IMG/VR virus record: IMGVR_UViG_3300031857_000010
Coordinates: 1 to 64,000 of that record
Direction: 5' to 3' (one strand)
DNA length: 64,000 bases
Position numbers and translations under genes: made by a program
The notes under the pieces: model-generated
What the model saw: the letters and a program-made list of their open reading frames with translations, nothing else
Told to the model about the DNA's origin: nothing
Databases searched by the model: none
In this document: positions 1-40,394 of the stretch, one piece after another
How positions within the stretch are numbered: position 1 is the stretch's first letter
How the letters are laid out: each line of letters starts with the position of its first letter

Positions 1-1
1 A

Positions 2-2251
2 TCAGGAAGTGCAGGTTCATCTGGTACAAGCGGTAGTGCGGGTAGTTCTGGTATAGACGGAAGTTCCGGTTCATCTGGAAGTTCGGGTACATCAGGTAGT
101 GCAGGATCATCTGGTACAAGCGGTAGTGCGGGTAGTTCTGGTACATCAGGAAGTTCTGGTAGTGCAGGAACATCTGGTTCATCTGGAAGTTCGGGTACAA
201 GTGGTAGTTCGGGTAGTTCAGGAACATCTGGTTCATCTGGTAGTTCTGGTACATCTGGATCATCTGGTAGTGCAGGAACTAGCGGTAGTGCAGGTTCATC
301 TGGTACAAGTGGTAGTGCAGGTAGTTCTGGTATAGATGGAAGTTCCGGTTCATCTGGAAGTTCTGGTACATCTGGTTCATCTGGAAGTTCGGGTACAAGT
401 GGTAGTGCAGGTTCTGCTGGTACAAGTGGTAGTGCAGGTAGTTCTGGTGTAAATGGAAGTTCTGGAAGTTCTGGTGTAAATGGAAGTTCAGGATCTTCTG
501 GGGCAGCTGGTACTTCTGGTTCCTCAGGTGTTTCACCTACTTTACCAACTCCTGCTGATTTTATTTGGACTTATGGAAACAGTTATAACACTTCTTTAAA
601 AGTTTTAAGGAATAATTATACATTAAATGTTTATAGTAACTGGAGTATCTTGGCTGGAAGAAGTAATTCGATTGCTCAGTTTGCTGATCATGCTGGAATA
701 TTAGCCGGTAGAGACAACACTATAACATCAACTACATATAGACCAAGTCAATACGCTTTAATATTCGGAGGAAATCAAAGTAAAATTAAGAGATCATCTA
801 AAAATTCAGGTATATTCAATGGATATAAAAACTACATAGGAAATAATGATGACATTTACTTTAATACAACCAAATACAATAATATTACAACTGGAAAGTT
901 AAATAGAATAAATATAAATTTTGTTCCTACTCCTCAAGATAATATTAACATTGATTATAATTTAATTTCAAACGGTATTGGTAATAAAATTTATGCTACA
1001 GCCCATACTCAAAGAAACTTTATAGTAAACGGATACCAAAACTTTTTAGGTTCTGCAAAAGCAAGTTTTATAGATAATGGTGCATACAATAAAATAGAAT
1101 TAAACATAAGAGGATATAAAAACAATTCTGATTATTTCAACGTATACAATAGTGTTTATAGTAAATATCATTTTATAAACAATGGATATAGTAACTTAAT
1201 TTCGGATTACCTAAGAATATATAAAGTAGATACTAATCAAAAATTCGAAATTAAAGGAAGATCAAACAGTATATTAAACGGGACTGATAACGAGATATAT
1301 GGTGGATTAAGTTTTATTACAGATGAAAATGCTACAACAACTTCTTCGCAATCATATTTTAATACTGTTGAAAATGGAAAGCAAAATAAAATCGTAGCTT
1401 CAGGAAAAACAAATTATAATTTCATACAAAATGGTTTACAAAATACAGTAAATAACACTACTAATTCTGGAATTTTAAATGGGTATAAAAATAGAATAAT
1501 ACAAATAATCAATGCAGATATTGATGGAAGGGCAGCCAATAATCTATTAAATAAATATAATAGTATTGGTAATGGAAATAGTAATTTAATTTCTGGACAA
1601 AATAAAGCAAATTCTGATTATACTTCTAAATACAACACTGTAGCTAATGGTAGATTAAATAAAATAGAAGCTACTTCATATAGAGGATATAGTGCAAATA
1701 CAGAATATAATTTTATTGCAAATGGAAGAGGAAATGAAATTTATGCAGCAAAATTTTCTGGTATTTTGGGTGGATCTGGACACACTATTCGTTTTAATCA
1801 TTCTGTTATACTTGGAGGTACAAATCTCACATCAACAAGAGATGAAGAAGCTAGAGTTAAGAATTTAACTATTACAAATCAAGTTCTTGGTGGAGATAGA
1901 TTTTTAACTATTGACTCTGCAACAGGTTATGTTTATTATACGGGAACTACTGGAGGGGGTAGTGGTTCTGGAACTTCTGGTTCAAGTGGTAGTTCTGGAA
2001 TTAATGGAAGTTCAGGATCTTCTGGTAGCTCTGGGGCAAGCGGAAGCTCAGGTTCATCAGGAAGTGCTGGAGAAAGTGGAAGCTCAGGTTCATCAGGAAG
2101 CACTGGGGCAAGTGGAAGCTCAGGTTCATCAGGAAGTACTGGAGCAAGTGGAAGTTCAGGATCTTCTGGTAGTTCTGGTGCAAATGGTTCATCAGGAAGT
2201 TCTGGTGCAAGCTTTCAACAAATGTTAATAATAACATCATTAGGAGTGTAA
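2..2251 (+). CDS. Tail/virion fibre-like protein, 5'-truncated, with two Gly-X-Y Ser-rich tracts and a central Asn-Gly beta-helix-like region
   Basis: The frame of the called ORF 650..2251 stays open back to position 2 (SGSAGSSGTSG...GVSPTLPTPADFIWTYGNSYNTSLKVLRNNYTLNVYSNWSILAGRS), so the TTG at 650 is internal. At least 749 aa. Confidence 0.8.
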   Translation, partial: SGSAGSSGTSGSAGSSGIDGSSGSSGSSGTSGSAGSSGTSGSAGSSGTSGSSGSAGTSGSSGSSGTSGSSGSSGTSGSSGSSGTSGSSGSAGTSGSAGSSGTSGSAGSSGIDGSSGSSGSSGTSGSSGSSGTSGSAGSAGTSGSAGSSGVNGSSGSSGVNGSSGSSGAAGTSGSSGVSPTLPTPADFIWTYGNSYNTSLKVLRNNYTLNVYSNWSILAGRSNSIAQFADHAGILAGRDNTITSTTYRPSQYALIFGGNQSKIKRSSKNSGIFNGYKNYIGNNDDIYFNTTKYNNITTGKLNRININFVPTPQDNINIDYNLISNGIGNKIYATAHTQRNFIVNGYQNFLGSAKASFIDNGAYNKIELNIRGYKNNSDYFNVYNSVYSKYHFINNGYSNLISDYLRIYKVDTNQKFEIKGRSNSILNGTDNEIYGGLSFITDENATTTSSQSYFNTVENGKQNKIVASGKTNYNFIQNGLQNTVNNTTNSGILNGYKNRIIQIINADIDGRAANNLLNKYNSIGNGNSNLISGQNKANSDYTSKYNTVANGRLNKIEATSYRGYSANTEYNFIANGRGNEIYAAKFSGILGGSGHTIRFNHSVILGGTNLTSTRDEEARVKNLTITNQVLGGDRFLTIDSATGYVYYTGTTGGGSGSGTSGSSGSSGINGSSGSSGSSGASGSSGSSGSAGESGSSGSSGSTGASGSSGSSGSTGASGSSGSSGSSGANGSSGSSGASFQQMLIITSLGV
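5..535 (+). repeat. Gly-X-Y coding repeat, about 59 triplets (GSS/GTS/GSA), with ~90-bp near-exact internal duplications
   Basis: Gly codons in 9-bp phase at every checkpoint (5, 95, 185, 275, 365, 455, 482-527). Bases 1-52 closely match 91-142. Confidence 0.92.
1970..2212 (+). repeat. Second Gly-X-Y tract, 27 triplets, including a 36-bp tandem repeat x3 (2042-2149)
   Basis: GTS GSS GSS GIN ... GAS. The unit ggaagctcaggttcatcaggaag-N13 occurs at 2042, 2078 and 2114. Confidence 0.92.
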
Positions 2252-2256
2252 AAATT

Positions 2257-3159
2257 ATGATAATAGATTCAACAACAGATTCAATAAATGTTTTATTGTC
2301 GGGTAATGTAATAACATCGCAATTGGATATAATATCCTCTTATAATACTATAACTACAACATCTTTAACTCCGGGAAAATTTCAAGGTACAACTAATAAT
2401 TTAACACCAGTTACCATTGTTCCCTCTCCCGGTGTCAACCAACAAAATCAACTGAGATTTTGTTCTATATATAATAATGATAGTACAAACGCTACTGTAA
2501 CAATTCAATATAGTGGAAATGCGGGACAATCAATTATATTTATATCTAGTATTGATGCTGGAGATTCCATTCAATTTACTCATGATAAGGGTTGGGGGAC
2601 TTATGGTGCAGAAGGGGAGCAAAGAGTTTTGGGAATGAATGATGCTCCCGGAGAATTAAGATTTCCAATAAATCTTAAACCAATAAATTTAACAGATATA
2701 TTAACCTTGGCATCAGGTACAGATTATGGCTTTCATTTAGGAGAGGCAGATAGGGCTTATTCCAAAGTTAGTATTAGGTATAACGTTGTGAGTAATCCCA
2801 CTCCAACAACTTATGCTGAAGTTGCTATATATAAAACTCAATTTAAATTAGCTTCAGCAACTACTGTAGTAAATCTATGTGGATTTGCTGATATATCTGG
2901 AGTTATAAATACGACCGGAAACAAAACAACAACTATTAATGTTACAGGAATAACAGAAAACGATGATTTATTTGTTGTATTTGGAACTGTTCATACTGGA
3001 ACATTTACATTAAGAGCTGGTTTGGTTGATTCATTAGAGTCCGGTGGAGCAGGTTCAGTAGCTGGAAGCTTAAGACCTTCAACAAATTCAAGTTTAACAC
3101 TAAACACTTCCGGTGTTTTAAATATTCCTTGGATTGCATATCAACCATCTCAATGGTAA
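2257..3159 (+). CDS. Fibre-associated beta-rich protein, paralog 1 of 3
   Basis: 300 aa, Thr/Ser/Asn-rich. Shares the N-terminus (MIIDSTTDSINVLL), SGTDYxFxLGxADR and RPSTNSSL with its neighbours. Confidence 0.65.
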   Translation: MIIDSTTDSINVLLSGNVITSQLDIISSYNTITTTSLTPGKFQGTTNNLTPVTIVPSPGVNQQNQLRFCSIYNNDSTNATVTIQYSGNAGQSIIFISSIDAGDSIQFTHDKGWGTYGAEGEQRVLGMNDAPGELRFPINLKPINLTDILTLASGTDYGFHLGEADRAYSKVSIRYNVVSNPTPTTYAEVAIYKTQFKLASATTVVNLCGFADISGVINTTGNKTTTINVTGITENDDLFVVFGTVHTGTFTLRAGLVDSLESGGAGSVAGSLRPSTNSSLTLNTSGVLNIPWIAYQPSQW

Positions 3160-3171
3160 AAAAAATAAATT

Positions 3172-4110
3172 ATGGTATTAGACGCAACAACAGATTCGCT
3201 TGAAGTTATATTATCAACGGCACACTCAGTAAGACCGCTGCAATTTTATGTATCTTATAATACTATTAATGTAACCAATTCGACAATAGTTCCCACAAAA
3301 AGTTTTGGTTCAACAAATGGTATTACATCTGTAACTATGGTTTCTGCACCATCATCTAACGAAGTAGATCAAGTAAAATTTCTTTCAATTTACAACTGTG
3401 ATAATAGACAAAATACTGTTACTGTAAGGATAAATTCATCATCTAATTTTAGAATATTATTTTCAATTCAATTGCTTAGTGGAGAGCAACTTCAATACAC
3501 AATTGCTGATGGTTTTAAAGTTTTTAATATGGATGGTATTTTAAAAACTGCAAATGCAACAGTTGGAAGTGCCGGAGTTAAATATGCTGTTTTACCTAAT
3601 CCATACTCTAATGGAACACAAACAATAACCAGTGGAACTGATTATGCATTTTATTTGGGAAAAGCAGATAGAAGATATGATTCTGTAACAATTCAATTAG
3701 CTGTTACTACAGCACTTGGAGCTACAATAACATGGGCAGAAGCAGCAATATATAAAGGTTATCCAGAAATTGCAACAAATTTGACTTTGACCAGATGTGG
3801 ATTTGTCGATGTTTCGACTGGTACAAACCACGGCGTAAATGCTACTGGAGGTAAAACTATTGTTATACCAATAGGTGATGGTAATCTTTCTGTTGGAGAG
3901 GATATTTGGTTTGTTATAGGGACTGTTACAAGTGGTACGGCTTTAGTTCTAAGATCTGTTGGGGCTGGTGGTGTAGATACTATAGGTGCAGGCATTGTTC
4001 AAACAGTAACCGGAAGTTTTAGACCATCAACAAATTCATCACTTTCTTTTACACTTCAAACAGCAGTCCAACCAGTACAAGTTGCTTGGTTTGGTGCTAT
4101 TAATGTTTAA
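3172..4110 (+). CDS. Fibre-associated beta-rich protein, paralog 2 of 3
   Basis: 312 aa. MVLDATTDSLEVIL, SGTDYAFYLGKADR, RPSTNSSL. Confidence 0.65.
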   Translation: MVLDATTDSLEVILSTAHSVRPLQFYVSYNTINVTNSTIVPTKSFGSTNGITSVTMVSAPSSNEVDQVKFLSIYNCDNRQNTVTVRINSSSNFRILFSIQLLSGEQLQYTIADGFKVFNMDGILKTANATVGSAGVKYAVLPNPYSNGTQTITSGTDYAFYLGKADRRYDSVTIQLAVTTALGATITWAEAAIYKGYPEIATNLTLTRCGFVDVSTGTNHGVNATGGKTIVIPIGDGNLSVGEDIWFVIGTVTSGTALVLRSVGAGGVDTIGAGIVQTVTGSFRPSTNSSLSFTLQTAVQPVQVAWFGAINV

Positions 4111-4122
4111 AAATAAATAAAA

Positions 4123-5037
4123 ATGCTAATAGATAATACCAATGAAACAATTGAACTAGTACTTGCTGCTAGTGTTACGACAAATCAGGCAACATTTTCT
4201 TGTTCATTTAATGAATTTTCATCTAATACGTTTTCAGGGAATGAAACTAATGGTACAAGTAATAATACCACAGCGGTGACTTTAGTAGCAAGTCCTTCAT
4301 CAGGTTTTCAAAGACAAGTTAGAGAATTAATTATTGAAAATAATGATACCGCTTCGATTACAGTCACCATAAGATTTAATAATACATCGGTTACTAGAAT
4401 AATTATGAAAGCTATATTAGCAGTTGGAGATAGTTTAACTTATTCAGCACATGACGGTTGGAATTGTAAAGATACAAACGGAGGAATTAGATTTTATAAC
4501 ATACATATCAATCCAACTGGAAGTGTTAGAGGTCCTGAATTTTTTCCAGTTTCTGCTGCTGCTACGACTACAACTTTAGGTGCGAATGTTGCAGGTCAAT
4601 ATTTGGGTAAAGCTGAAAAGGCATATTCATCAATCGATTTTAGGTATAGAGTTGATACGGCTATTGCTGGTACTCAAACATTTTCTGAACTGGCTGTTTA
4701 TAGGATTTCAAATAGAATGAGCATAGGAACACAACAAGTATGGACAAGATTGGGTTTTACAAACTGTGCTGCTGTATGGAATTCCACCGGTTTAAAAACA
4801 ACTAATGTTGCTCTTACAGGTTGTAGAACAGGTGATGATTTATATGTAATTTGGGCAAGTAATAATACTACATCTATGGCACCAAGAAGTGGCAACTATG
4901 CTGATCCAATAAGTTCAATATTACAAGTTACAACAACAACCGTAGCAAGCTGGAGACCAAGCACATCACCTCTATATCAAGCTACAAGTTTTACTGCAGC
5001 TGCATCAGCTGTATGGGTCTTGTGGCAAGGAAATTAA
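4123..5037 (+). CDS. Fibre-associated beta-rich protein, paralog 3 of 3
   Basis: 304 aa. MLIDNTNETIELVL, YLGKAEKAYSSI, RPSTSPL. Confidence 0.65.
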   Translation: MLIDNTNETIELVLAASVTTNQATFSCSFNEFSSNTFSGNETNGTSNNTTAVTLVASPSSGFQRQVRELIIENNDTASITVTIRFNNTSVTRIIMKAILAVGDSLTYSAHDGWNCKDTNGGIRFYNIHINPTGSVRGPEFFPVSAAATTTTLGANVAGQYLGKAEKAYSSIDFRYRVDTAIAGTQTFSELAVYRISNRMSIGTQQVWTRLGFTNCAAVWNSTGLKTTNVALTGCRTGDDLYVIWASNNTTSMAPRSGNYADPISSILQVTTTTVASWRPSTSPLYQATSFTAAASAVWVLWQGN

Positions 5038-7397
5038 AATATAATTTTATTAATTTTATCTATTACCATATTTGAAGTAATTGATTTGGTACATTCAAAT
5101 TGTCTTGAAGTTCCTTTATGTCTTGGGCACCAATTCCAGTCAGCAGGATCTAATCTAAAATCATTGAAACATCCATTGCAAGTTTTAGTCTGATCTTCTA
5201 CAAACACTCGTTCACAATCTGTCATTTCGCAAATAGGTCTAGAAAAACCACTTATTAATACAGTTGGTTTATTCAATGACCAAGATAACCATGATAAACC
5301 ACTGCCCAATCCAATAAAACCTTCTGAGTGATAAATATAATTACATATTTCTTGAATAGTCTTACCATCTATTTTAATTACACCTTTAGGGTTTTTATTT
5401 CCCATATAATTATCAGGTTCTTTTGATAAAAGAAAAACTTCATAATCATTAGATTTCAAATAGTCAACAACTTCTTGCCAGCCGTTTGGATTATTCCAAT
5501 ATTTAGATTGAGCTGTGGAATGATTAGCAATACAAAAATATTTTTTATTAGTTGGTCTTTCAGATGGAGTAAAATCTATTTTTGGTTTTATTTCTTTGAA
5601 TTCTAATCCCAAAATATCACAAGCTGTTTTTTGTAGATGTTGATCTCTGAAATTAAAAGGATTTTTTGATGATACTATTTCGTTTTTATCATCATAAAAC
5701 CAACCTATAGTAAACATTTTATATAGATTATGAACTACTGATCCCGGTTGAACAAATTCTATTTCTGGATAATTTTTTTCAAAAAAACTATTATGGAAAG
5801 TTGAACATATTACTTTACAATTATTTTTTATTCTAAACTCTTCAACTTGTGGAAACCAAGCGATTGTGTCTCCCAGTGATGAGGAATCTAAGTGTATATA
5901 TATACGTTGATTTTCAAATGATGGTTTAATGATATGAGTTTTACCTTCAAGTTTATATTGTATATAAAAATCTCTATGATATTCTCTGTTCAACTGAGCG
6001 AACATATTATTTCTTAAAGTGGTTTCGTATAAAAGATCATTTGTTTCATTGTCAAAAAATCTGAATTTCACTTCAAATTTTTCTTCGCATTTTAAATCTA
6101 TTCTTGGTTCTTTAAAATATGAAAATAAAACTTCTGTTTTTGTTTTTTTATTTTCTTTAATTGAAATTGGTGTTTTTTCATAAACATCAATTAGTGTATC
6201 TTTAAGATTCATGTTTTCTTTTTTTTCATTATTTGATCCTTTATCAAGTTCAATAAAAGAAGCTCTAAAGTTTTGGTAATTAAAATAAATTGGAATTTTG
6301 TTTTGTATTTTTTGTTTAATCAATTCTAAATTATTTATGCCACTTCTATTGTTATTGTGTAGGTGAGTGTTATCAGAAAAATAATTTATTTTACAATTTA
6401 TATTAGAAGCAATTTCATATATAGTTTCGGCATCATCAAATGAATTTATTCTTAAAAAAGCATAATCCAAATCAATATATTCATCAAAATAAAGATCATG
6501 ATCAAAAAAAAGAATTTTTAGTTTTTCATTTTGTTTTTCATTGTAATTGAAATTAAAGAAACCTATTTTTTTTCTTGAATTTTCCCAGTTTAATGGACTT
6601 ATATATGTTGATTCGGCAGCTTCGTATATATCATCAAAGAATGTGTTTTTTCTCGGATATTCAATATTTGAATTTTTTCTTCTTTCTTTTGCTTCTTTTA
6701 TGAGAACAACCTCACCTCTTATATTCCAATTTCTAAAATTTTCAGAATCATAATGTTGTCTAGCCAAATAAACTGTTCTAGGAATAGTCAACCATTTTCC
6801 TTTTTCTTCGAGATTAATTAACCATTGAGCATCATTAGAAGTACATATTTCATTATCTTCATGTACTTTAAAATTAAGTTCTGGTAAATTTCTAAATATT
6901 CTTAAGTAGCCAAAAATTCCACTTCTTTCTGGTGTCAATCTTTCAAATGCTTCTAAAAATGAATTATTATCTCTTGATATATAAACATTGTCAACAAATC
7001 TTTCTAAAAAATTTTCTTTAGAGGAAGGTAATGAATCTTGATATTTATTAGCATTAAAATGTAGAAAAATAACTTCTGGAAATTTTTCAAAATAAAAAAC
7101 AATCTTTTCAAATGTATTTGGTAAAATTTTATCATCACCATCAATTGGACATACTATGTCTCCGGTAGCATGTAGTTGTGGATTCCACCAAATTTCTTTT
7201 TTATAATTTGGTTTTTTTAATTTTATTCTGTTATCTAGTCTTGAAAGTTCTTCGAGAATTTTACCTGTATTGTCTGAAGAAAAATCGTCAGCTATAATCC
7301 ATTCCCAATTATTATATCTTTGAGACAGAATTGAACTTGCTAATTCTTGGATATATTTTTCAGAATTATAAAAGGAAGTTATTATAGATAATTTCAT
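5034..7397 (-). CDS. GT2 glycosyltransferase fused to an AAH/TibC-like (autotransporter O-heptosyltransferase family) domain
   Basis: N-terminal GT2 motifs (SIITSFYN, IADDFSSD, PIDGDD). C-terminal IHLDSSSLGDTIAW, FIGLGSGLSWLSW, VLISGFS and the four-Cys motif CNGC...WCPRHKG...FEC characteristic of the AAH/TibC family. Confidence 0.8.
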   Translation of the reverse strand: MKLSIITSFYNSEKYIQELASSILSQRYNNWEWIIADDFSSDNTGKILEELSRLDNRIKLKKPNYKKEIWWNPQLHATGDIVCPIDGDDKILPNTFEKIVFYFEKFPEVIFLHFNANKYQDSLPSSKENFLERFVDNVYISRDNNSFLEAFERLTPERSGIFGYLRIFRNLPELNFKVHEDNEICTSNDAQWLINLEEKGKWLTIPRTVYLARQHYDSENFRNWNIRGEVVLIKEAKERRKNSNIEYPRKNTFFDDIYEAAESTYISPLNWENSRKKIGFFNFNYNEKQNEKLKILFFDHDLYFDEYIDLDYAFLRINSFDDAETIYEIASNINCKINYFSDNTHLHNNNRSGINNLELIKQKIQNKIPIYFNYQNFRASFIELDKGSNNEKKENMNLKDTLIDVYEKTPISIKENKKTKTEVLFSYFKEPRIDLKCEEKFEVKFRFFDNETNDLLYETTLRNNMFAQLNREYHRDFYIQYKLEGKTHIIKPSFENQRIYIHLDSSSLGDTIAWFPQVEEFRIKNNCKVICSTFHNSFFEKNYPEIEFVQPGSVVHNLYKMFTIGWFYDDKNEIVSSKNPFNFRDQHLQKTACDILGLEFKEIKPKIDFTPSERPTNKKYFCIANHSTAQSKYWNNPNGWQEVVDYLKSNDYEVFLLSKEPDNYMGNKNPKGVIKIDGKTIQEICNYIYHSEGFIGLGSGLSWLSWSLNKPTVLISGFSRPICEMTDCERVFVEDQTKTCNGCFNDFRLDPADWNWCPRHKGTSRQFECTKSITSNMVIDKINKIIF

Positions 7398-7423
7398 TTA
7401 TATAATTTTATTTATTTAAAACA

Positions 7424-8905
7424 TTAAAAATTCTTGAGTTTTTTATTTTTAATCTTAATTGCAAAGTTATCCATTTTTAAATTAAAAGGGATTTTATTCA
7501 CAAAAAACTGAGTTAATCTATATTGTCCAAAATTTATTCTTAATTCATATAATTCATTTTCTTTAAGAGGTGAACTTGGAACCATATAAAAAGAGTTATT
7601 TTTTATTCTACACCCAGAAATTACAACTCCATTTTTATTATGTACAGTTGCCATTATAAATAAATTTTTTTCACATAAAAATTCAAATCTTATATAATTT
7701 TCTTCCACGTTAATTAAAAATGTAGAATTTACAAATTCTTCACTCTCTAAATATTCATTTTTGACAAATGAAATTTTAACTGCATTATCTGCTAACCAAG
7801 TTTTACCAAAAGAATGGTCACAATTTAACCAAGTTTTTTCAATATCTGGTCTAGATTTATAATCTATTAATTTTTTCTCTGTTTCACAATCTTTTGATAA
7901 AGTCCAATCTGTTTCGGTATAACTATTGTAATTTTGATTTTCACCAACCCTTAACCATTTTTCTTCGAATTGAGTGTGAGATAATCCTCTAAAAATTCCC
8001 CATGAGCTGACACGAGGTAAACATATTGATTCATTACCCCTTTCGAAAAAAGAAATATTATTCATTTTTAATCTAAAAAACCAATCTAAATCTTCACACT
8101 CACCTCCAATAAATCTTTCATCCATCAAGCCAATTTTTCTAAACAATTGTTTTGAACAACCAAAAAGTCCAAAATTAACCTCTGAAACAAATGCATAACC
8201 AGAACACAAGAGAACTAAAAGATTTTCTATAATTTCAAACGTTGTATTTACTCTTGGATGAATCCAAAAAATAAATTCACTATCATGCATACAAAATACA
8301 GACTCATTTATAATTTGAGAAAAAGAATTGTATGTGCCTGACCAAATTTCATTTCTAAACCATGTTTCATAAACAAAATTATTTTTTACACAATCTTTTA
8401 GAATTATTTTTTCATTTTCATAATTATTTTTACCTAAAAAAGCTAAACCTATTTTCGATGGTTTTAATTGACGAGCTTTAAGGAATTTGAAGTATTTATC
8501 AGTTACATCGTTCAAAAATGATATTTTTTGAGTTCCATTAAATATTAATATTAAATTTTTTTGATCTGTAATATTTATTTTAAAAGATGTTATATCAATT
8601 AAATCTTTTAATTTATTCTCAATTAAAAAATATTCTTCATTGTTTTCTGTAATAATAGCTATTGATCCCCAAAGGTTAATTTTATTTATCAAACTATGTA
8701 TGTCATTATTTTCATTATCTGATAAATCTTTAAATTTTATTATTATCAAATCAAATTTATGATTCAAAGAATTATAATAAATTTCACTTGATTGATTGCT
8801 GTAATCCTTTTTATTTTCTAAAATTGAATTTTTGTCTAAAATTTTTGAATAATTTAATAAATTACAAGTTGTAATAAGTAATTCTTTGATAAATATATAA
8901 TTCAT
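7424..8905 (-). CDS. Glycosyltransferase-like protein (GT-A/GT7C-like core)
   Basis: LFRKIGLMDERFIGGECEDLDWFFRL resembles the GT2/GT7 C-terminal motif. Lies in a glycosylation operon. Confidence 0.55.
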   Translation of the reverse strand: MNYIFIKELLITTCNLLNYSKILDKNSILENKKDYSNQSSEIYYNSLNHKFDLIIIKFKDLSDNENNDIHSLINKINLWGSIAIITENNEEYFLIENKLKDLIDITSFKINITDQKNLILIFNGTQKISFLNDVTDKYFKFLKARQLKPSKIGLAFLGKNNYENEKIILKDCVKNNFVYETWFRNEIWSGTYNSFSQIINESVFCMHDSEFIFWIHPRVNTTFEIIENLLVLLCSGYAFVSEVNFGLFGCSKQLFRKIGLMDERFIGGECEDLDWFFRLKMNNISFFERGNESICLPRVSSWGIFRGLSHTQFEEKWLRVGENQNYNSYTETDWTLSKDCETEKKLIDYKSRPDIEKTWLNCDHSFGKTWLADNAVKISFVKNEYLESEEFVNSTFLINVEENYIRFEFLCEKNLFIMATVHNKNGVVISGCRIKNNSFYMVPSSPLKENELYELRINFGQYRLTQFFVNKIPFNLKMDNFAIKIKNKKLKNF

Positions 8906-9697
8906 TTATAAATATTTTTTTTTAAAGTATATCATAGATAAAATTTGCATATCTAGACTTGGTAAATTAATATCACTTTCTAGACATTTGTTTATGTTTT
9001 TTTTATTAAGAACGGGATTTATTTTTTTATTTAAATGTAGAAAATTATTAAATTTTGATAGTAATTGATATTTGCTTAATTTTTCTGAGCCTACTTGAAT
9101 TACATTTTCAAAATTTTCAGGATTTTCTATAATAAATTCACAAATTTCAGCCCACTGCAATGTAGTTATTCCATTCCAAAAAACATTAGTAAATCCATCA
9201 ATTATTTGTCTTTCATTATTAACAAACCAATTCCAAAGAGAAAAATTAGAATTTTTTTCTGGTCCAACGATAGAAGTTCTTATTTGCTTTACATTTTTAT
9301 AGTTTTTCTCTAAGAACAATGATCCATATGCTTTGGATGAACCATAATTATCTTCAGCATTTCTTATTGTTTTTTTTGAATAAAATCCATTTTCTTCAAT
9401 ATTACCATTAAACTCACAATCTGTGCTAGGATGAATGATCAATCCATTAAAATTATCAGCCAACCATATTGGAAGCATGATGTTAATCGTTAAGTAATCA
9501 TTAAGTTTTGGATTTTTTTGAGGAATAATTCCTATGCAATTAATTAATACATCAGCTTCAGAATTTTTAATTTTCAGTTTAAAATTTTCATCAGGCCATT
9601 TCAAATCTAATGTATCAACTTTGAAACCTTTGATTTTAAAATAACTTAAAACAACATGGCCTAACATACCATTGTGGCCCAATATTAAAATTTTCAT
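8906..9697 (-). CDS. RmlD-like SDR nucleotide-sugar reductase
   Basis: GHNGMLG Rossmann motif, INCIG, YGSSK catalytic YxxxK, IRTSIVGPE, WNGITT. Confidence 0.75.
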   Translation of the reverse strand: MKILILGHNGMLGHVVLSYFKIKGFKVDTLDLKWPDENFKLKIKNSEADVLINCIGIIPQKNPKLNDYLTINIMLPIWLADNFNGLIIHPSTDCEFNGNIEENGFYSKKTIRNAEDNYGSSKAYGSLFLEKNYKNVKQIRTSIVGPEKNSNFSLWNWFVNNERQIIDGFTNVFWNGITTLQWAEICEFIIENPENFENVIQVGSEKLSKYQLLSKFNNFLHLNKKINPVLNKKNINKCLESDINLPSLDMQILSMIYFKKKYL

Positions 9698-9700
9698 TAT

Positions 9701-10252
9701 TTAGTAAATTAATTGTTTAAATCTACTGATTTTTTTTACCATGGTAACGCCCGGATTAAATGGTAGTGTTAGAATTTCAAAATCGTCAATTAAATTTTTT
9801 TTAATAAATAAAGGGGTTTTATATGCATCATTACAAAAACCCGGATCAAACATGTAAGGGTCATAAGGGTATGTATCATGAAAGAATATGAATCCATCTT
9901 CTATAATGTGTTTTGAGGCATTCATAAAATCTTTTAAAGATTGTTCATGTGAATGATCAGCATCAATAAAAATCATATCAAACTTAATGTTGGGATCTAG
10001 TTCTTCAAAAAATTTGTCTGTTGTCATTTGAAAATATTTCATATTACCTTTTAAGTTAAATGGACATGATGATGTGTCTACTCCCCAAGACTCTTGACAA
10101 AATTCAGAAATTGGATTAAAATTTCTTCCATCTCTCACACCAAGCTCTAAATATCTTTCAGGTTTTAAGTATGAACATATAAATGAAAAATAAGATACAT
10201 GATCAAATGTTTCAAGTGGTGGTGGTACGTTTCTTAAGTGTATTGGTTTCAT
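9701..10252 (-). CDS. Class I SAM-dependent methyltransferase (Methyltransf_24-like)
   Basis: YLELGV, FDMIFIDADHSHEQSLKDF, FHDTYP. Confidence 0.8.
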   Translation of the reverse strand: MKPIHLRNVPPPLETFDHVSYFSFICSYLKPERYLELGVRDGRNFNPISEFCQESWGVDTSSCPFNLKGNMKYFQMTTDKFFEELDPNIKFDMIFIDADHSHEQSLKDFMNASKHIIEDGFIFFHDTYPYDPYMFDPGFCNDAYKTPLFIKKNLIDDFEILTLPFNPGVTMVKKISRFKQLIY

Positions 10253-10259
10253 ATTTTTT

Positions 10260-11186
10260 TTAAATATTGTTGAAGTAATTTTTGTTCAATAAAAATGTAT
10301 TTAATTCTTCTTTACTTAGACAGTGATCTTTACTTGAATATTCTTTGAAATTTAATTCATTGAAAACCTTATGATAATGCATTAACAAATAATTATCAAT
10401 TTCTTTTGTTCTAGAAACTTCTTCTTCTGCAATCATGATTTCGTGTATTTTTTCAGATATTCTTGGTTCACCTATTTTATATCTCAAACCAAATTTTTTT
10501 TGATAAATTTCGAAAAGATCTTTAATATAAAAACTTTTTATTTTAGGTATTATATTGTAGCTTTTTTGTGTCAAAGAAAATTCAACTAACTCTATAGCTT
10601 CATCAATAGTCAAAATAAATCTTGTCATATTTTCAGAATATAGAGTCAGTTCGTAGTCTTTTTTTATAGCATCCCAAATTAGAGGGATAATACTTCCAGT
10701 AGAATTAGCAACATTTCCATAAATTGCACAACTCAATCTTGTTTCTGAGCATTCAGAGTTCACTATAAAACTTTCTCCAGCTACAAATTTCATAGCTCCA
10801 TATAAAGTCGTAGCTCCTCTACTCTTATCAGAAGAAATAAAACAAGCTGATTCCATCTTATTTTCCTCTGCTACCCTTCTTGAGTTTAATGCCCCTTCTA
10901 TAATTATTTTTACTGCTTCCTCCACGTTTTGATCAACACTTTCTATTTGTTTTAGAGAAGCTGCAAAAATTCCAATATCATGTTTTGTTGAAGCTCTCTT
11001 TAATAAATCATAGTTTCTAATATCTCCAATTACAGTTTTAATTTTTGGATATTCTTTTTTTAAAAAATAATGCTTTGATTCATCTCTACTATAAACTGTA
11101 ATTTCGTTATTATTATAATATTTTTTTATAAGATTTTTACCTAAAAAACCTGCACCTCCGGTTATAAATATTTTTTTATCTTTCAT
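10260..11186 (-). CDS. UDP-GlcNAc 4,6-dehydratase (PseB/FnlA/CapD-type)
   Basis: FITGGAGFLG, YSRDESKH, IGDIRN, SSDK, YGAMK, YGNVANSTGSIIP, MTRF, RISEKIHE. Confidence 0.82.
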   Translation of the reverse strand: MKDKKIFITGGAGFLGKNLIKKYYNNNEITVYSRDESKHYFLKKEYPKIKTVIGDIRNYDLLKRASTKHDIGIFAASLKQIESVDQNVEEAVKIIIEGALNSRRVAEENKMESACFISSDKSRGATTLYGAMKFVAGESFIVNSECSETRLSCAIYGNVANSTGSIIPLIWDAIKKDYELTLYSENMTRFILTIDEAIELVEFSLTQKSYNIIPKIKSFYIKDLFEIYQKKFGLRYKIGEPRISEKIHEIMIAEEEVSRTKEIDNYLLMHYHKVFNELNFKEYSSKDHCLSKEELNTFLLNKNYFNNI

Positions 11187-11191
11187 AATTT

Positions 11192-14100
11192 TTAAATTAA
11201 ATCAAATTCATGGTCTAGGTTTTTTGAATATTGTAAATATCTTTCATATTCCTCCATAAACGGATTTAGATTTCCCCCCTGTGAAGCTCCGGGTTGATAG
11301 TACCATCTTTCGTTCAAATGATATATTTTTGGATCTAGATATTTGTTCGCAATTCTCACTGTTCCATCTATTTCATTTTTCCATGGATTTTCATTCTCTT
11401 CTAAAGAAGAAATTAGAAATTCTCTATTCCAGATACATGCATTGTGAGTCAAAAGCCATTCACTATTATTTTTTGCTTTTAATACTCTTTTACCTTCAAC
11501 AAAATGACTTGTTTTAATAAATTCATATGAACCCCAAAGCTTTTCATGTATTCTTAGACAGTTCCAATCGTTTAACCTAACCTTGTGAAGAGATTTCTTG
11601 AAAGTATTATAATCAGCTTTTACTGTAAGCCACATATCTTCCTGCATATATAATACATATTTTGTATTCAATTTACTCAAAATATCGAGTAGTCTATTTG
11701 AAAATTGAGATGAGTCAATTGATTTAGGAGATTTAATGTTATTAACCCTGAAATCATTGAATGGTAAATCTTTTTCTTCTGTACAAAAATATACCGGCCA
11801 ATTCAAACTCCAATCCCAATATCTGGAAAAAGATAAATACCAACCATTCCAAAATCTTTCATAATTATCACATGATTGAATAATTACAGTTATATCATCA
11901 TCAATATTTTCTTTTCTATATATTGGGGTATTTGGATCGATATCAGTTCCCTCTTTAAATCTCATATCTATTGATGATATTCCGGGCTGTTGAAGAAAAT
12001 AAGGTATTCTATAAATTCCTCTTTTTCTGTTCCAGAAAAATATATTACACCATAGATCATATGCATCCCAATTTGTATTTAATAGTTTATCTGCATATTC
12101 ATTTATGTGAGATTTAGTTATTAAATAACAATGTGCTTCTGATTGTTTGAACGTGAAGAACAAATCATTAACTATATTTTCGTGCTCAACTCCCGGAATT
12201 TGTTTACCAAAAGATGTTGAGATTAAATCATGTTTATTGTTTAAAAAATAGGTATCTATAATTTTTTCATAAACTTCTTTATATTCACCAAAAACTATAC
12301 AATCACATTCACAAATCAATATAGCATCATAATTTTTTATATAATCATCACAAATTGATTTTTTGTGTGAATTATAACATCCATAGTGAGATGGTGTCAA
12401 CAAATAATCTCCGGGATTTAAAGATATTGCGTGTGGTCTTTGACAATTTTCATAAGGGGGTAAATCATAATATTTTGGTGTTATTAATTGTTCATAATCT
12501 AATCCGTAAGATGATAGGTTGCGAAGAGATTCTATAGATTTAATTTCTCTTGGACCTTCGGGATTATTTAATATATGAATTATTTTGATTTTTGGTTTTT
12601 TGATACAATAAAAATTAGATAAATTTTTATCATCTGTATAATTGTCTTGATAATTGAAGCCACAATCTTTTAAAGTTTTTACTATAAAATTATACCCTTC
12701 AATTCCTATTGAATTAATATGAATCTCTCCTGTTATTTTCTTTATTTTATGTTTTAAAAAATCTTTGTCAATAGTTTCAAAAAATTCTAATTCTGCCCCT
12801 TCGCAATCAATCTTTAAATAATCGATATAATTGATATTGTTTTCAGAAATAAAATCATTTACATTTTTTATTGTGACTTTTTCTTTTTTTCTATTTAAAC
12901 CCCAATAATGTTCTATGTTTTCTGTTAATTCTTTCTTACCTGATATTGATGAAACCTCGCCTGTTAAAAATTCTACTTCTTCATTTTTAGCACCTATTCC
13001 GAAATTGAAAACTTGTATGTTGGATAAATCTTTTGTATTAAATTTTAAATATTCATATGTCTCTTTTATGGGTTCTATTGAATAAACCTTTTTAGCACCC
13101 ATCGAAGCAGCATATAATGTAAAAAGTCCTATATTAGAACCAATATCAACAACTATATCATTATTCTCTATGTTTTTATAATCTTCTCTTATGAAAATTT
13201 CATAAAAACTCCAAAATGAAGAATGATCTATTGGATTACATTTAAGTTCTATTTTTTTATTTTGTATTATTATTTCTGTTGTTGGAAATACATTTGGTTT
13301 CCATGTAGTTTTTTTTAAATCTAAAAAAGATTCACTTTGTATTATGTTTAAATCGTTGTCAAAAAATTCTACACAAATTCCATTTCTATGATTTTGTTGA
13401 GCATTTGGAATCATCCACATTCCATCTCCCTTATTGAAAGATAAGTCTGAATATAGACTTTGAAAAACTAAATTGGTTAAGGGGTCTCTCATTCTTATAT
13501 TGTATGTTTTGAGAGAAGGGTGATTGCTTATTATTGAATAATGTATTTTACCTTCATTTTCATCATAAGACACATCAAAAAATTTTTGTTTAGTTCTAAG
13601 TTTTAATTTATCTTTAATTAATTCAATATTGTTCTCTGAATTAGATAAATAATTTATATTATCAAATTTATCAAAATAATTTTGATATACATCTAAATTA
13701 TAAAGTAGAATTGGAATTTTCCAACCGATAGCTTCTCTTAAAACTAAAGGCATTGTCTCTTTATCACCATTATTGCCCCTAGATGTAAAAAGAAATAAAT
13801 CCATGCAACTGTAAAAAGTATCTGTATCATTTCTTTCACCCCATATTCTGCAATTTGCAGGTTTGTTAATTAATAAAGGTTCCCAATAGAATTTAAAATT
13901 ATCAGCCTGATTTCCTAAAAAATGAAATTCTACAGTATTGTCAAAATATTTAGCTAATTCAAATATTTCAGCTTGATTTTTTCTTGGTGTAAAAAGTCCA
14001 ACATTTAATATATGTTTTTTTTTGGGATCTAATCCTAGTTTTATTAATGTTTCCTCTCTATTGGGTCTTTCTTTGTATTCTATTGGATATTCTGCCAAAT

Positions 14101-14557
14101 ATTTAGGAACATCAATATTTTTATATTGTTCAATTTGCCAATTGCTTACAAAAAGAAATGCATCTGGAAAATATTTTTTGTTTTCATCCGGATTGTAAGA
14201 TGAATCATGACTAGTTTCAAAAATTTTATATGATCTATTTTTATTATAAATAAAATCAGCAATTTCTTTTGGTAAAAAATATTCCGGAATTTCTTCAATA
14301 TGAATGAAATCTGGTTTGATATTATCAATTAAATCTTTAATTTCATATAATTTGTTTTGTCCTAAAGAGAAAAAATGATTTTCATCTAAAATTTTTGTTA
14401 TTCTGTTTCTTTGAATTACTAAAACTCCACCAGTAATATTTTCATATTCAATACAGAAAACCTCTAATTTATCCTTAAGAAGTTCTATTTTTTTGAATAA
14501 GTATTGTGGTAGACCCCCTGTTGAAAGGTGTGGAGCAATAAATATTATTTTTTTCAT
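11192..14557 (-). CDS. Multidomain protein: GT4 + FkbM methyltransferase + two GT-A-like domains
   Basis: GT4: APHLSTGG, NVGLFTPRKNQ, DLFLFTS, ETMPLVLREA. FkbM: DIGSNIGLF, LKIDCEGAE. Then YGCYNSH...ECDC, and QSCDNY...QEDMW. Confidence 0.75.
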   Translation of the reverse strand: MKKIIFIAPHLSTGGLPQYLFKKIELLKDKLEVFCIEYENITGGVLVIQRNRITKILDENHFFSLGQNKLYEIKDLIDNIKPDFIHIEEIPEYFLPKEIADFIYNKNRSYKIFETSHDSSYNPDENKKYFPDAFLFVSNWQIEQYKNIDVPKYLAEYPIEYKERPNREETLIKLGLDPKKKHILNVGLFTPRKNQAEIFELAKYFDNTVEFHFLGNQADNFKFYWEPLLINKPANCRIWGERNDTDTFYSCMDLFLFTSRGNNGDKETMPLVLREAIGWKIPILLYNLDVYQNYFDKFDNINYLSNSENNIELIKDKLKLRTKQKFFDVSYDENEGKIHYSIISNHPSLKTYNIRMRDPLTNLVFQSLYSDLSFNKGDGMWMIPNAQQNHRNGICVEFFDNDLNIIQSESFLDLKKTTWKPNVFPTTEIIIQNKKIELKCNPIDHSSFWSFYEIFIREDYKNIENNDIVVDIGSNIGLFTLYAASMGAKKVYSIEPIKETYEYLKFNTKDLSNIQVFNFGIGAKNEEVEFLTGEVSSISGKKELTENIEHYWGLNRKKEKVTIKNVNDFISENNINYIDYLKIDCEGAELEFFETIDKDFLKHKIKKITGEIHINSIGIEGYNFIVKTLKDCGFNYQDNYTDDKNLSNFYCIKKPKIKIIHILNNPEGPREIKSIESLRNLSSYGLDYEQLITPKYYDLPPYENCQRPHAISLNPGDYLLTPSHYGCYNSHKKSICDDYIKNYDAILICECDCIVFGEYKEVYEKIIDTYFLNNKHDLISTSFGKQIPGVEHENIVNDLFFTFKQSEAHCYLITKSHINEYADKLLNTNWDAYDLWCNIFFWNRKRGIYRIPYFLQQPGISSIDMRFKEGTDIDPNTPIYRKENIDDDITVIIQSCDNYERFWNGWYLSFSRYWDWSLNWPVYFCTEEKDLPFNDFRVNNIKSPKSIDSSQFSNRLLDILSKLNTKYVLYMQEDMWLTVKADYNTFKKSLHKVRLNDWNCLRIHEKLWGSYEFIKTSHFVEGKRVLKAKNNSEWLLTHNACIWNREFLISSLEENENPWKNEIDGTVRIANKYLDPKIYHLNERWYYQPGASQGGNLNPFMEEYERYLQYSKNLDHEFDLI

Positions 14558-14598
14558 TAATTATAAAATTAATAAAAAAAACTTAAAAAAGAAATTAT

Positions 14599-15480: not shown

Positions 15481-15498
15481 ATTTTAATATTATTTAAA

Positions 15499-15506
15499 AA
15501 TAAATA
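15499..15506 (-). promoter_or_regulatory. Candidate late promoter TATTTATT
   Basis: 18 nt upstream of the ATG at 15480. Confidence 0.45.
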
Positions 15507-15519
15507 GTATTTTAAAAAA

Positions 15520-17982: not shown

Positions 17983-17985
17983 TCT

Positions 17986-24999: not shown

Positions 25000-25048
25000 A
25001 TTCTATTTTTATAACTAAAATAATTTATAAACACAAAAAAATAATTAA

Positions 25049-40388: not shown

Positions 40389-40394
40389 AATTAT

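What the first reader, a model, noticed from the sequence alone, without database searches (positions are those of the whole stretch)
2..14557. Candidate phage virion-glycosylation system: an AAH/TibC-type O-glycosyltransferase cassette abutting Ser-rich fibre genes
Seen: a fibre gene with at least 86 Gly-X-Y triplets that are mostly Ser/Thr, plus three Thr/Ser-rich paralogs, converges directly on a six-gene cassette. The nearest gene fuses a GT2 to a domain (about 5034-5910) with DSSSLGDTIAW and the four-Cys motif CNGC/WCPRH/FEC (5091-5180). Established: AAH/TibC enzymes are iron-containing protein O-heptosyltransferases that glycosylate Ser residues of bacterial autotransporter beta-helices. 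Inference: the phage primes Ser/Thr of its own fibres with this domain, then extends and methylates the glycan with the neighbouring GTs and methyltransferases, paralleling fibril glycosylation in eukaryotic giant viruses. No ADP-heptose genes occur in this window, so the donor sugar may differ or come from the host.
Basis: partly seen in the sequence, partly recalled or inferred. Interest (0 to 1): 0.85.

Follow-up and report, generated by a model that had tools for sequence, protein, structure and literature searches.

The report
Phage TibC-like glycosyltransferase beside serine-rich collagen fibre
A large aquatic phage carries a true relative of the bacterial TibC/AAH protein O-glycosyltransferases next to a giant, proline-free Gly-Ser-Ser collagen-like fibre gene; the same pairing recurs in many unrelated phages, so these viruses probably sugar-coat their own fibres, which has not been described.

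Summary
The window starts inside a fibre gene with 86 Gly-X-Y triplets, 81% Ser/Thr in X/Y and no Pro. The intact gene elsewhere is 1633 aa with 312 triplets. It converges on six soluble sugar-enzyme genes.

The nearest gene is a GT2 fused to a TibC/AAH domain:
- TIGR04414 scores 286.9 bits (cut-off 200).
- The model superposes on TibC 4RAP at TM 0.87.
- The catalytic Asp, the phosphate-binding Thr/Lys, the Trp and all four iron-finger Cys are conserved.
- TibC's adenine-reading Arg is Ile here, as in most of the viral clade, and no ADP-heptose genes occur. The donor is probably not ADP-heptose.

- 17 of 30 dereplicated viral TibC-like loci carry a Ser/Thr-rich Gly-X-Y repeat gene within 10 kb.
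- 0 of 59 control clusters and 0 of 50 bacterial homologue loci do. Sampled bacterial loci carry AIDA-repeat giants instead.
- The cultured Microcystis phage Mel-JY01 shows the same layout.

Most likely this is cytoplasmic O-glycosylation of the phage's own fibre, extended and methylated by conserved partner enzymes. It is unproven biochemically. The three paralogs look like tip or surface modules, not substrates. I rate it a new variant of a known enzyme family.

The parts
2..2251 (+). 3' part (about aa 885-1633) of a 1633-aa collagen-like fibre gene; the window and its contig start inside the repeats
   Evidence: Open frame from base 2. The intact 1633-aa gene is in ENA contig L303: 312 triplets, 432 Ser + 68 Thr and 0 Pro in X/Y. 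Matches to PHROG tail-fibre families and to Pfam Collagen.
5..535 (+). End of collagen block 2: 59 Gly-(Ser/Thr)-Ser type triplets; proposed O-glycosylation target
536..1969 (+). Asn-rich repeat domain of the fibre (motif N-G-x-x-N-x-I); no match to AIDA or TIGR04415 target repeats
   Evidence: PHROG tail-fibre and tail-protein hits cover it.
1970..2212 (+). Collagen block 3: 27 triplets, followed by only a 12-aa tail, so the fibre has no C-terminal head domain
2257..3159 (+). Paralog 1 (300 aa): two beta-sandwich domains, probably a virion surface or fibre-tip module
   Evidence: Paralogy. Model pLDDT 82.6. Fold matches the C-terminal domains of phage 'collagen triple helix repeat' proteins, actinophage minor tail proteins, the Bxb1 tail tip and cyanophage A4 capsid chain Z.
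3172..4110 (+). Paralog 2 (312 aa)
   Evidence: 36% identical to paralog 1.
4123..5037 (+). Paralog 3 (304 aa)
   Evidence: 30-32% identical to paralogs 1 and 2.
5034..7397 (-). 787-aa bifunctional glycosyltransferase: N-terminal GT2 plus C-terminal TibC/AAH (BAHT) domain
7044..7388 (-). GT2 (GT-A) domain core, aa 4-118
   Evidence: Pfam PF00535, 73 bits. Best PDB match is 5HEA GalT1, E 4e-10.
5043..6146 (-). TibC/AAH-like domain, aa 418-785. Catalytic Asp510 (nt 5868-5870); Thr628/Lys632; Trp703; iron-finger Cys740/743/757/769 (nt 5091-5180); Ile684 (nt 5346-5348) in place of TibC Arg-286
   Evidence: TIGR04414 286.9 bits. 4RAP E 2e-54. TM 0.87. Residue mapping.
7424..8905 (-). 493-aa protein of unknown family. 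A homologous segment (aa 173-367) sits next to TibC fusions in another phage cluster. Possibly a further transferase.
   Evidence: No Pfam, NCBIfam, PHROG or PDB hit. 31-32% identity hits in the L045/L063 group.
8906..9697 (-). RmlD-like sugar-nucleotide reductase (263 aa)
   Evidence: PF04321, 39.8 bits.
9701..10252 (-). Class I methyltransferase (Methyltransf_24, 183 aa)
10260..11186 (-). PseB/FnlA/CapE-type UDP-HexNAc 4,6-dehydratase (308 aa)
   Evidence: PF02719, 154 bits; TIGR03589, 174 bits, below its cut-off. PDB 4TQG, 2GN4 and CapE.
11192..14557 (-). 1121-aa multidomain enzyme: GT4-like GT1 domain (aa 1-320; nt 13598-14557), FkbM methyltransferase (aa 471-636; nt 12650-13147), C-terminal region with a weak GT25-like signal. 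The GT4-like domain is the conserved partner of the viral TibC-like domain.
   Evidence: Pfam. Homologues of aa 1-320 are in most of the 66 of 80 TibC loci that this protein matches (elsewhere only its FkbM region matches), either fused to the TibC domain or encoded next to it.

Best explanation
This is a phage-encoded protein O-glycosylation system aimed at the phage's own collagen-like fibre.

Shown:
- The C-terminal domain of the 787-aa protein belongs to the TibC/AAH (BAHT) family. It has that fold, the catalytic base, the phosphate-binding and sugar-binding residues and the Fe(Cys)4 finger.
- It sits in a viral clade distinct from the bacterial enzymes.
- Across that clade it is fused to, or adjacent to, a conserved GT4-like transferase, often with an FkbM methyltransferase.
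- In most fusion-type lineages it lies within a few kb of a giant, proline-free (Gly-Ser/Thr-Ser)n gene.

Inferred:
- In the infected cell's cytoplasm the TibC-like domain transfers the first sugar onto Ser (possibly Thr) hydroxyls of the fibre repeats. The intact fibre has about 500 candidate sites per chain.
- The enzyme may act as a ring-shaped oligomer along the rod-like substrate, as TibC does on TibA.
- The fused GT2, the GT4-like domain and further transferases extend the glycan.
- The PseB-like dehydratase and RmlD-like reductase supply a 6-deoxy-hexosamine-type sugar, and the methyltransferases cap it.
- The donor of the priming step is probably not ADP-heptose. The adenine-reading Arg is replaced by Ile and no heptose pathway is present.
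- The glycan would stabilise or shield a triple helix that lacks Pro and charged residues, and would shape the virion surface.
For: Enzyme identity: TIGR04414 286.9 bits against 200; phmmer to 4RAP E 2e-54 over TibC residues 37-386; model-to-4RAP TM 0.87. Asp110, Thr226, Lys230, Trp305, Cys339/342/358/370 and Phe368 equivalents are invariant or nearly so in 150 relatives. These residue roles come from PMC4358343.

Association: collagen-like Ser/Thr-rich ORFs lie near 16 of 23 fusion clusters, at distances of 48-4900 bp. The controls show 0 of 78 and 0 of 50. Fisher p = 1.6e-10.

Same layout elsewhere: cultured Microcystis phage Mel-JY01 and megaphage LR756501.

Reverse test: 15 of 77 collagen-anchored loci carry a TibC-like gene, whereas the forward scan confirmed only 135 relatives in all of IMG/VR.

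Bacterial contrast: bacterial homologues are usually followed at once by a giant ORF, and two were sampled (16 AIDA repeats in L200, a weak AIDA hit in L176). This is the classical enzyme-next-to-substrate layout, and it shows that adjacency predicts the substrate in this family.

Other points:
- The partners are Pro-free and almost uncharged.
- A conserved GT4-like partner is present.
- All six cassette proteins lack transmembrane segments, and the 64 kb holds no polytopic membrane protein.
- TibC modifies Ser, also on short peptides.
- Arg-286 is lost in the viral clade.
Against: - There is no biochemical or proteomic evidence.
- Adjacency could simply reflect placement of sugar genes in the host-recognition cluster of T4-like aquatic phages, where such genes are usually read as host O-chain modifiers (PMC7029224).
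- Seven fusion clusters and six stand-alone clusters show no collagen-like gene within the flank, although several of those flanks are truncated.
- Many Ser/Thr-rich collagen genes with full flanks have no TibC-like gene nearby.
- The fibre also contains a non-collagen repeat domain that could be the real target.
- The control loci were anchored on a sugar gene, not on a structural gene.
- Whether (Gly-Ser-Ser)n forms a triple helix at all is unknown.
Confidence: 0.6

Rival explanations
1. Host-surface remodelling (the conventional 'LPS-type auxiliary gene' reading). The cassette and the larger sugar island at 38.5-57 kb would alter host O-antigen, capsule or a host surface protein during infection, for example to block superinfection. 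The neighbouring fibre gene would be coincidental, because both sit in the hypervariable host-recognition cluster.
For: Glycosyltransferases and sugar-nucleotide genes inside the tail-fibre cluster of pelagimyophages and cyanomyophages are interpreted this way (PMC7029224). The window carries many further sugar genes (GMD, UGDH, epimerases, GT1/GT2, FkbM) away from the fibre.
Against: The TibC family consists of cytoplasmic protein Ser O-glycosyltransferases, not lipid-linked glycan enzymes. The window has no flippase, polymerase, ligase, Gtr-type or other polytopic membrane protein. The specific pairing with Ser/Thr-rich collagen genes recurs across diverged lineages and is absent from 78 sugar-gene-anchored control loci.
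Confidence: 0.15
2. Virion glycosylation of a target other than the collagen repeats. Candidates are the Asn-rich repeat domain of the same fibre, the three beta-sandwich paralogs, other large structural proteins or the capsid.
For: Classical BAHT substrates are beta-solenoid repeats, and the fibre has a 480-aa repeat domain. Stand-alone viral TibC-like genes (the L006-L021 group) lie beside 1900-2500-aa non-collagen structural ORFs with 20-25% Ser+Thr. Mycobacteriophages glycosylate capsid and tail-tube proteins (cited in PMC12619734).
Against: The fibre's central domain gives no AIDA or TIGR04415 match. The paralogs occur only in the closest relatives. The feature shared by the partners of fusion-type enzymes is the (Gly-Ser/Thr-Ser)n block, and in some partners it makes up over 80% of the protein (L024: 852 triplets in 3122 aa).
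Confidence: 0.2
3. The domain is an inactive relic or a purely structural module, and nothing is glycosylated.
For: The Arg-286 equivalent, whose Ala mutant inactivates TibC, is missing.
Against: The catalytic Asp, Thr/Lys, Trp and four Cys are invariant in 150 relatives at 45-65% identity, which indicates purifying selection on the active site. The Arg is replaced consistently by small hydrophobic residues across a whole clade rather than randomly.
Confidence: 0.03

Closest known systems
TibC / AAH bacterial autotransporter heptosyltransferases (BAHT family; PDB 4RAP/4RB4; TIGR04414)
   Same: Same fold (TM 0.87) and N-terminal beta-barrel, same catalytic Asp and Thr/Lys/Trp donor contacts, same Fe(Cys)4 finger, and hydrophobic thumb-tip residues. 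Soluble. Encoded next to a long, rod-like, repetitive Ser-rich protein.
   Different: A separate viral clade (100/100 split from the bacterial genomes). Fused to GT2 here, and to GT4-like or methyltransferase domains elsewhere. The adenine-reading Arg-286 is Ile and Pro-300 is Gly. No ADP-heptose genes. The neighbour is a collagen-like Gly-X-Y protein, not an AIDA-repeat autotransporter.
Mycobacteriophage virion glycosylation (Freeman et al. 2023, as cited in PMC12619734)
   Same: Phage-encoded glycosyltransferases that modify the phage's own structural proteins in the cytoplasm.
   Different: Different enzyme families. The targets are the C-termini of capsid and tail-tube subunits, not collagen-like repeats. 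The hosts are actinobacteria.
Serine-rich-repeat adhesin glycosylation in Gram-positive cocci (Fap1/GspB; GtfA/B, GalT1). The pathway is recalled from my own knowledge; the GalT1 match is.
   Same: Hundreds of Ser in short repeats are O-glycosylated in the cytoplasm by a priming enzyme and then by several soluble extension transferases. The GT2 domain's best solved relative is GalT1 (5HEA).
   Different: The priming enzyme there is a GT4 pair, the substrate is exported by an accessory Sec system, and no virus or collagen periodicity is involved.
BclA exosporium collagen-like glycoprotein of Bacillus; Mimivirus collagen and fibril glycosylation; glycosylated Thr in Riftia cuticle collagen (all from my own knowledge)
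   Same: Collagen-like Gly-X-Y repeats carrying O-linked, partly methylated or deoxy sugars. In Riftia, sugar on Thr replaces hydroxyproline as the stabiliser of the triple helix. In Mimivirus, the virus encodes the machinery.
   Different: Different transferases. BclA repeats are Pro-rich. Mimivirus uses hydroxylysine-linked glucose. None involves a TibC-type enzyme or a bacteriophage.

Membership tests
BAHT (TibC/AAH) O-glycosyltransferases, TIGR04414 | Full-length match to the family HMM above the curated cut-off | tested here: met
   286.9 bits against a cut-off of 200; model positions 7-374 of 374.
BAHT (TibC/AAH) | TibC protomer fold (beta-barrel, atypical GT-B domain, thumb and finger insertions) | tested here: met
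   Model pLDDT 93.9. TM 0.87 and rmsd 2.8 A to 4RAP. The next family, WaaC/GT9, reaches TM 0.41-0.55.
BAHT (TibC/AAH) | Catalytic base Asp-110; beta-phosphate contacts Thr-226 and Lys-230; sugar contact Trp-305 | tested here: met
   Asp510, Thr628, Lys632 and Trp703. Asp, Lys and Trp are invariant, and Thr is T or S, in 150 relatives.
BAHT (TibC/AAH) | Iron finger with four Cys (Cys-339, 342, 358, 370) | tested here: met
   Cys740, 743, 757 and 769, invariant in 150 relatives. Iron binding itself cannot be tested here.
BAHT (TibC/AAH) | Arg-286 reading adenine N1 (ADP-sugar specificity), and residue 300 (Pro or Ser) contacting heptose O4/O6/O7 | tested here: not met
   Ile684 and Gly698. At the Arg position, V/I/L/T/A in 28 of 33 viral sequences against Arg in about 41 of 46 bacterial ones. 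Residue roles are from PMC4358343.
BAHT (TibC/AAH) | Adjacent autotransporter substrate with AIDA-type strand-loop-strand repeats (TIGR04415 / PF16168) | tested here: not met
   No such match in the fibre. Bacterial relatives do have it, for example 16 AIDA repeats in L200.
BAHT (TibC/AAH) | Dodecameric ring; heptosyltransferase activity on Ser | not testable with these tools
   The thumb-tip Phe-265/Val-266 equivalents are Tyr/Met, and Phe-368 is conserved.
Collagen-like triple-helix proteins (PF01391) | Long uninterrupted Gly-X-Y runs | tested here: met
   86 triplets in the window and 312 in the intact gene. Pfam Collagen scores 116.5 and 265.6 bits.
Collagen-like triple-helix proteins | Stabilising Pro/Hyp or charged residues in X/Y positions; a trimerisation domain | tested here: not met
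   0 Pro and 10 charged residues among 624 X/Y positions. The fibre ends 12 aa after the last block. No trimerisation domain was identified.
Phage O-antigen / LPS modification modules (Gtr-type or Wzx/Wzy-dependent) | Membrane-embedded flippase, polymerase, ligase or GtrA/B/C components | tested here: not met
   No protein with multiple strong hydrophobic segments in the 64 kb, and none of the six cassette proteins has a transmembrane segment.

The most novel reading that the evidence does not exclude
Aquatic tailed phages, from T4-like and jumbo phages to megaphages, carry a previously unrecognised virion-modification system. In it, a viral branch of the TibC family has switched both substrate (from autotransporter beta-helices to proline-free Gly-Ser/Thr-Ser collagen-like fibres of up to about 870 triplets) and nucleotide-sugar donor. 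It would work with a conserved GT4-like partner as a processive fibre-glycosylating machine. Dense O-glycans would take over the helix-stabilising role of hydroxyproline and would form a mucin-like coat that governs host recognition and survival of the virion.
Probability: 0.4. Interest if true: 0.9.

Novelty: new variant of a known kind. Interest (0 to 1): 0.78.

Why it matters
Protein glycosylation of bacteriophage virions is documented for only a few actinophages. BAHT enzymes are known only as modifiers of proteobacterial autotransporter adhesins. If this reading holds, several things follow:
- A large environmental clade of these enzymes would act on viral collagen-like fibres. The forward IMG/VR scan confirmed at least 135 relatives, and the metagenome protein search found about 3,000 related proteins at E <= 1e-10.
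- Many 'LPS-like auxiliary genes' in the host-recognition clusters of aquatic phages would need to be re-read as virion-modification genes.
- It would explain how proline-free Gly-Ser-Ser 'collagens' can exist.
- It would supply a natural enzyme and substrate pair for making glycosylated collagen-like materials.
- It would add a new layer, surface glycans on fibres, to phage-host recognition in lakes and oceans.

The idea can be tested directly, because a cultured phage (Microcystis phage Mel-JY01) has the same gene arrangement.

Tried and rejected
- Classical BAHT target repeats in the fibre's central domain. NCBIfam at E <= 1 and Pfam at E <= 1 gave no TIGR04415 or AIDA match. That domain is therefore not a recognisable classical substrate.
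- Structural-gene control for the association test. I anchored it on the baseplate wedge protein, but it returned only 9 loci and was unusable. I used GDP-mannose dehydratase as the anchor instead.
- The three paralogs and the neighbouring large ORFs (14599-26485). PHROGs, Pfam and NCBIfam gave nothing useful. Only the predicted fold gave a lead for the paralogs.
- The 493-aa protein, the C-terminal 500 aa of the 1121-aa protein and its GT4-like domain. phmmer against the PDB found no hits.
- Megablast of window 1-20000 against deposited phage genomes found no match.
- Literature. Searches for TibC, BAHT or O-heptosyltransferase with phage, and for collagen-like with phage and glycosylation, found no paper making this link. 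Only the held library was searched.
- I considered and rejected DNA glycosylation (the enzyme family is protein-specific) and a real tRNA-Arg gene at 1944-2032 (it lies inside collagen-coding repeats).

Full report
WHAT IS THERE.

The window is the first 64 kb of a 216.7-kb IMG/VR viral contig. It has about 27% G+C, a T4-type baseplate wedge gene at 26951-28807 and PhoH. The contig breaks inside a repeat, so the first gene is cut.

Window 2-2251 (+) is one frame encoding the last 749 residues of a fibre protein. It has 59 Gly-X-Y triplets (nt 5-535), a 478-residue Asn-rich repeat domain, 27 more triplets (nt 1970-2212) and a 12-residue tail. That is 86 triplets with 81% Ser/Thr in X/Y and no Pro.

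An ENA assembly of the same phage carries the gene intact (L303, 1633 aa). It has a short N-terminal motif and three collagen blocks of 184, 101 and 27 triplets, separated by a 170-residue globular domain and the Asn-rich domain. In the X/Y positions there are 432 Ser, 68 Thr, 0 Pro and only 10 charged residues. Other assemblies split the gene, so repeat-length errors are common here.

Three paralogous 300-312-aa genes follow (30-36% identity). They converge with a 4-nt overlap on six minus-strand genes (5034-14557).

THE ENZYME.

The 787-aa product of 5034-7397 has a GT2 domain (aa 4-118) and, at aa 418-785, a complete TibC/AAH domain:
- TIGR04414 scores 286.9 bits against a curated cut-off of 200.
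- phmmer to TibC 4RAP gives E 2e-54.
- An AlphaFold model (pLDDT 93.9) superposes on 4RAP with TM 0.87 and rmsd 2.8 A. The next family, WaaC/GT9, reaches TM 0.41-0.55.

I used the residue roles given in the TibC structure paper (PMC4358343). The catalytic base (Asp510), the beta-phosphate contacts (Thr628, Lys632), the sugar contact (Trp703), the four iron-finger cysteines (740, 743, 757, 769) and Phe-368 are conserved. They are invariant or nearly so in 150 relatives.

Two donor-side residues are not conserved. Arg-286 hydrogen-bonds adenine N1 and explains the use of ADP-sugars; here it is Ile684. Pro-300 contacts heptose O4/O6; here it is Gly698.

This is a property of the clade. The Arg position is V/I/L/T/A in 28 of 33 viral sequences and Arg in about 41 of 46 homologues from bacterial genomes. 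No ADP-heptose pathway family was found in any ORF of 150 aa or more in the 64 kb. Membership of the BAHT family is therefore secure, but heptosyltransferase activity should not be assumed.

THE REST OF THE CASSETTE.

- 7424-8905: no recognisable family.
- 8906-9697: RmlD-like reductase.
- 9701-10252: methyltransferase.
- 10260-11186: PseB/FnlA/CapE-type UDP-HexNAc 4,6-dehydratase.
- 11192-14557: a 1121-aa protein with a GT4-like GT1 domain, an FkbM methyltransferase and an unassigned C-terminal half.

None of the six proteins has a transmembrane segment, and the whole window lacks polytopic membrane proteins.

COMPARATIVE EVIDENCE.

The forward scan of IMG/VR confirmed 135 relatives of the TibC-like domain. 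The 80 loci fetched fall into 30 clusters at 90% identity.
- In 23 clusters the domain is the C-terminal part of a 695-1104-aa fusion. The fusion partner is usually a GT4-like domain, sometimes GT2 or a methyltransferase.
- In 7 clusters the domain stands alone.

In 16 of the 23 fusion clusters, a Ser/Thr-rich ORF with at least 20 Gly-X-Y triplets lies 48-4900 bp away. Several of the remaining clusters have truncated flanks. One stand-alone cluster (L066) has an interrupted Gly-Ser/Thr repeat protein of more than 1580 aa.

These partner genes are remarkable. They have up to 852-869 triplets, X is Ser/Thr, Y is Ser (or Asn/Ala/Asp), and there is essentially no Pro.

Controls:
- 78 viral loci anchored on GDP-mannose dehydratase (1.40 Mb, 59 clusters) contain none.
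- 50 loci around bacterial homologues contain none.
- Fisher p is about 1e-10.

In bacterial genomes the homologue is usually followed at once by a 1,600-3,300-aa ORF. Of the two I scanned, L200 has 16 AIDA repeats and L176 gives only a weak AIDA hit. This is the classical enzyme-next-to-substrate layout.

A maximum-likelihood tree separates the viral clade from the bacterial one with 100/100 support.

The same layout occurs in two further genomes:
- Cultured Microcystis phage Mel-JY01 has an unannotated ORF with 202 triplets, then a 'structural protein', then a 1226-aa FkbM...TibC fusion.
- Megaphage LR756501 shows the pairing too.

In the reverse direction, 15 of 77 loci anchored on such collagen genes carry a TibC-like gene in the flank. 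Many of these loci are cut in the repeats, but several complete ones lack it. TibC-like genes therefore predict such fibres well, while not every such fibre has a TibC-like gene close by.

Finally, the first 320 residues of the window's 1121-aa protein have homologues in most of the 66 of 80 TibC loci that this protein matches (elsewhere only its FkbM region matches). They are either fused to the TibC domain or encoded next to it. The conserved core is thus a GT4-like domain plus a TibC-like domain, often with FkbM. In this phage the two are at opposite ends of the cassette.

THE PARALOGS.

A model of paralog 1 (pLDDT 82.6) has two beta-sandwich domains. Its best structural matches are the C-terminal domains of phage 'collagen triple helix repeat' proteins, actinophage minor tail proteins, the Bxb1 tail tip and a cyanophage A4 capsid chain.

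Three points follow:
- The paralogs occur only in the closest relatives.
- Their Ser+Thr content is 22-25%.
- The fibre has no head domain after its last collagen block, so I read them as separately encoded tip or surface modules, perhaps alternative receptor-binding heads. This is inference. They are not part of the conserved enzyme-substrate pairing.

MECHANISM.

Shown: the enzyme family, the intact active site, the altered donor site, the soluble multi-enzyme context, and the recurrent linkage to (Gly-Ser/Thr-Ser)n genes.

Inferred: the TibC-like domain primes Ser (perhaps Thr) of the fibre in the cytoplasm. TibC itself modifies Ser, not Thr, works on short peptides, and handles rod-like substrates inside a dodecameric ring. 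The other transferases then extend the glycan, using a 6-deoxy-HexNAc-type sugar made by the dehydratase and reductase pair, and the methyltransferases cap it.

The idea that the glycan stabilises a helix lacking Pro and charge rests on my own knowledge of glycosylated Thr in Riftia cuticle collagen. It is untested here.

RIVALS.

(a) Host O-chain or surface remodelling is the usual reading of such genes in aquatic T4-like phages (PMC7029224). Three points count against it: the enzyme family, the lack of membrane components and the specific linkage to collagen genes.

(b) A different virion target is possible: the Asn-rich domain, the paralogs or other giant structural proteins. This is plausible for the stand-alone subgroup that sits beside 1,900-2,500-aa non-collagen ORFs.

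(c) An inactive relic is unlikely, given the conservation of the active site.

NOVELTY.

No paper in the searchable library links BAHT enzymes to phages or to collagen-like substrates. Known phage virion glycosylation concerns other enzymes and targets. I rate this a new variant of a known kind: a known enzyme family with a new host (viruses), new fusions, a probable new donor and a probable new substrate class.

Noticed in passing
window 38494-56969 (- strand), plus 34327-35520 and 61685-62947: A second, larger sugar island holds GDP-mannose 4,6-dehydratase, three further SDR epimerase/reductases, UDP-glucose dehydrogenase, a NAD synthase (43222-43977), at least three FkbM-type and one RrnaAD-type methyltransferases, GT2 and GT1 genes and a weak GT-D-like hit (53342-54172). 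In total the 64 kb carry at least 8 transferase domains and 6 methyltransferases, all soluble.
   Followed up: partly
L170 (Microcystis phage Mel-JY01, PP395634.1) 2-3049 + strand: The deposited annotation calls two minus-strand 'hypothetical proteins' (1-651, 739-2298) and a short + strand CDS. These lie over what is really one long + strand collagen-like ORF (202 triplets, 40% Ser+Thr) that runs off the record start. Antisense frames of Gly-X-Y repeats stay open and mislead gene callers.
   Followed up: partly
window 1944-2032 (+): ARAGORN calls an 89-nt tRNA-Arg(TCT) inside collagen block 3 of the fibre gene. It is almost certainly a false positive caused by the repeat.
   Followed up: no
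window 1911-2228 (+), 279-536 (-); L001 17073-18740 (+): Long open frames (up to 555 aa, Pro/Glu/Leu-rich) lie in alternative and antisense frames of the collagen repeats. They are mechanical artefacts, not genes.
   Followed up: yes
L303 15147-20048 versus L304/L305 and L001 13896-18820: The fibre gene is intact (1633 aa) in one ENA assembly. It is split or frameshifted within the repeats in several JGI assemblies, and the window's own contig ends inside it. This reflects assembly instability or real length variation of the repeat blocks.
   Followed up: partly
L006-L021 (e.g. L008 1-11083): Stand-alone viral TibC-like genes form a conserved three-gene unit: a giant ORF of at least 1,900-2,500 aa (20-25% Ser+Thr, not collagen-like), then a 720-730-aa protein with the GT4-like domain, then the TibC-like gene overlapping its stop. 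This may be a different substrate class.
   Followed up: partly
window 15520-17982 (-) and 25049-26485 (-): The 820-aa protein next to the cassette has a Pol-beta/MntA-type nucleotidyltransferase motif at aa 628-673. The 478-aa protein has a DNRLRE/CBM96-like carbohydrate-binding domain. Both lie among large ORFs with no family hits (14599-24999) that are presumably structural.
   Followed up: no
L173, L175 (MAG contigs binned as Polaromonas and a betaproteobacterium), L174 (Muiribacterium MAG): The three closest 'bacterial genome' hits fall inside the viral clade. Two have a small convergent Gly-Ser/Thr repeat ORF right after the TibC-like gene. They are likely phage or prophage contigs binned into MAGs.
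   Followed up: no
L128 6357-9146: One GMD-anchored control locus carries two tandem TibC-like genes (421 and 301 aa) without a collagen-like ORF in the flank.
   Followed up: no
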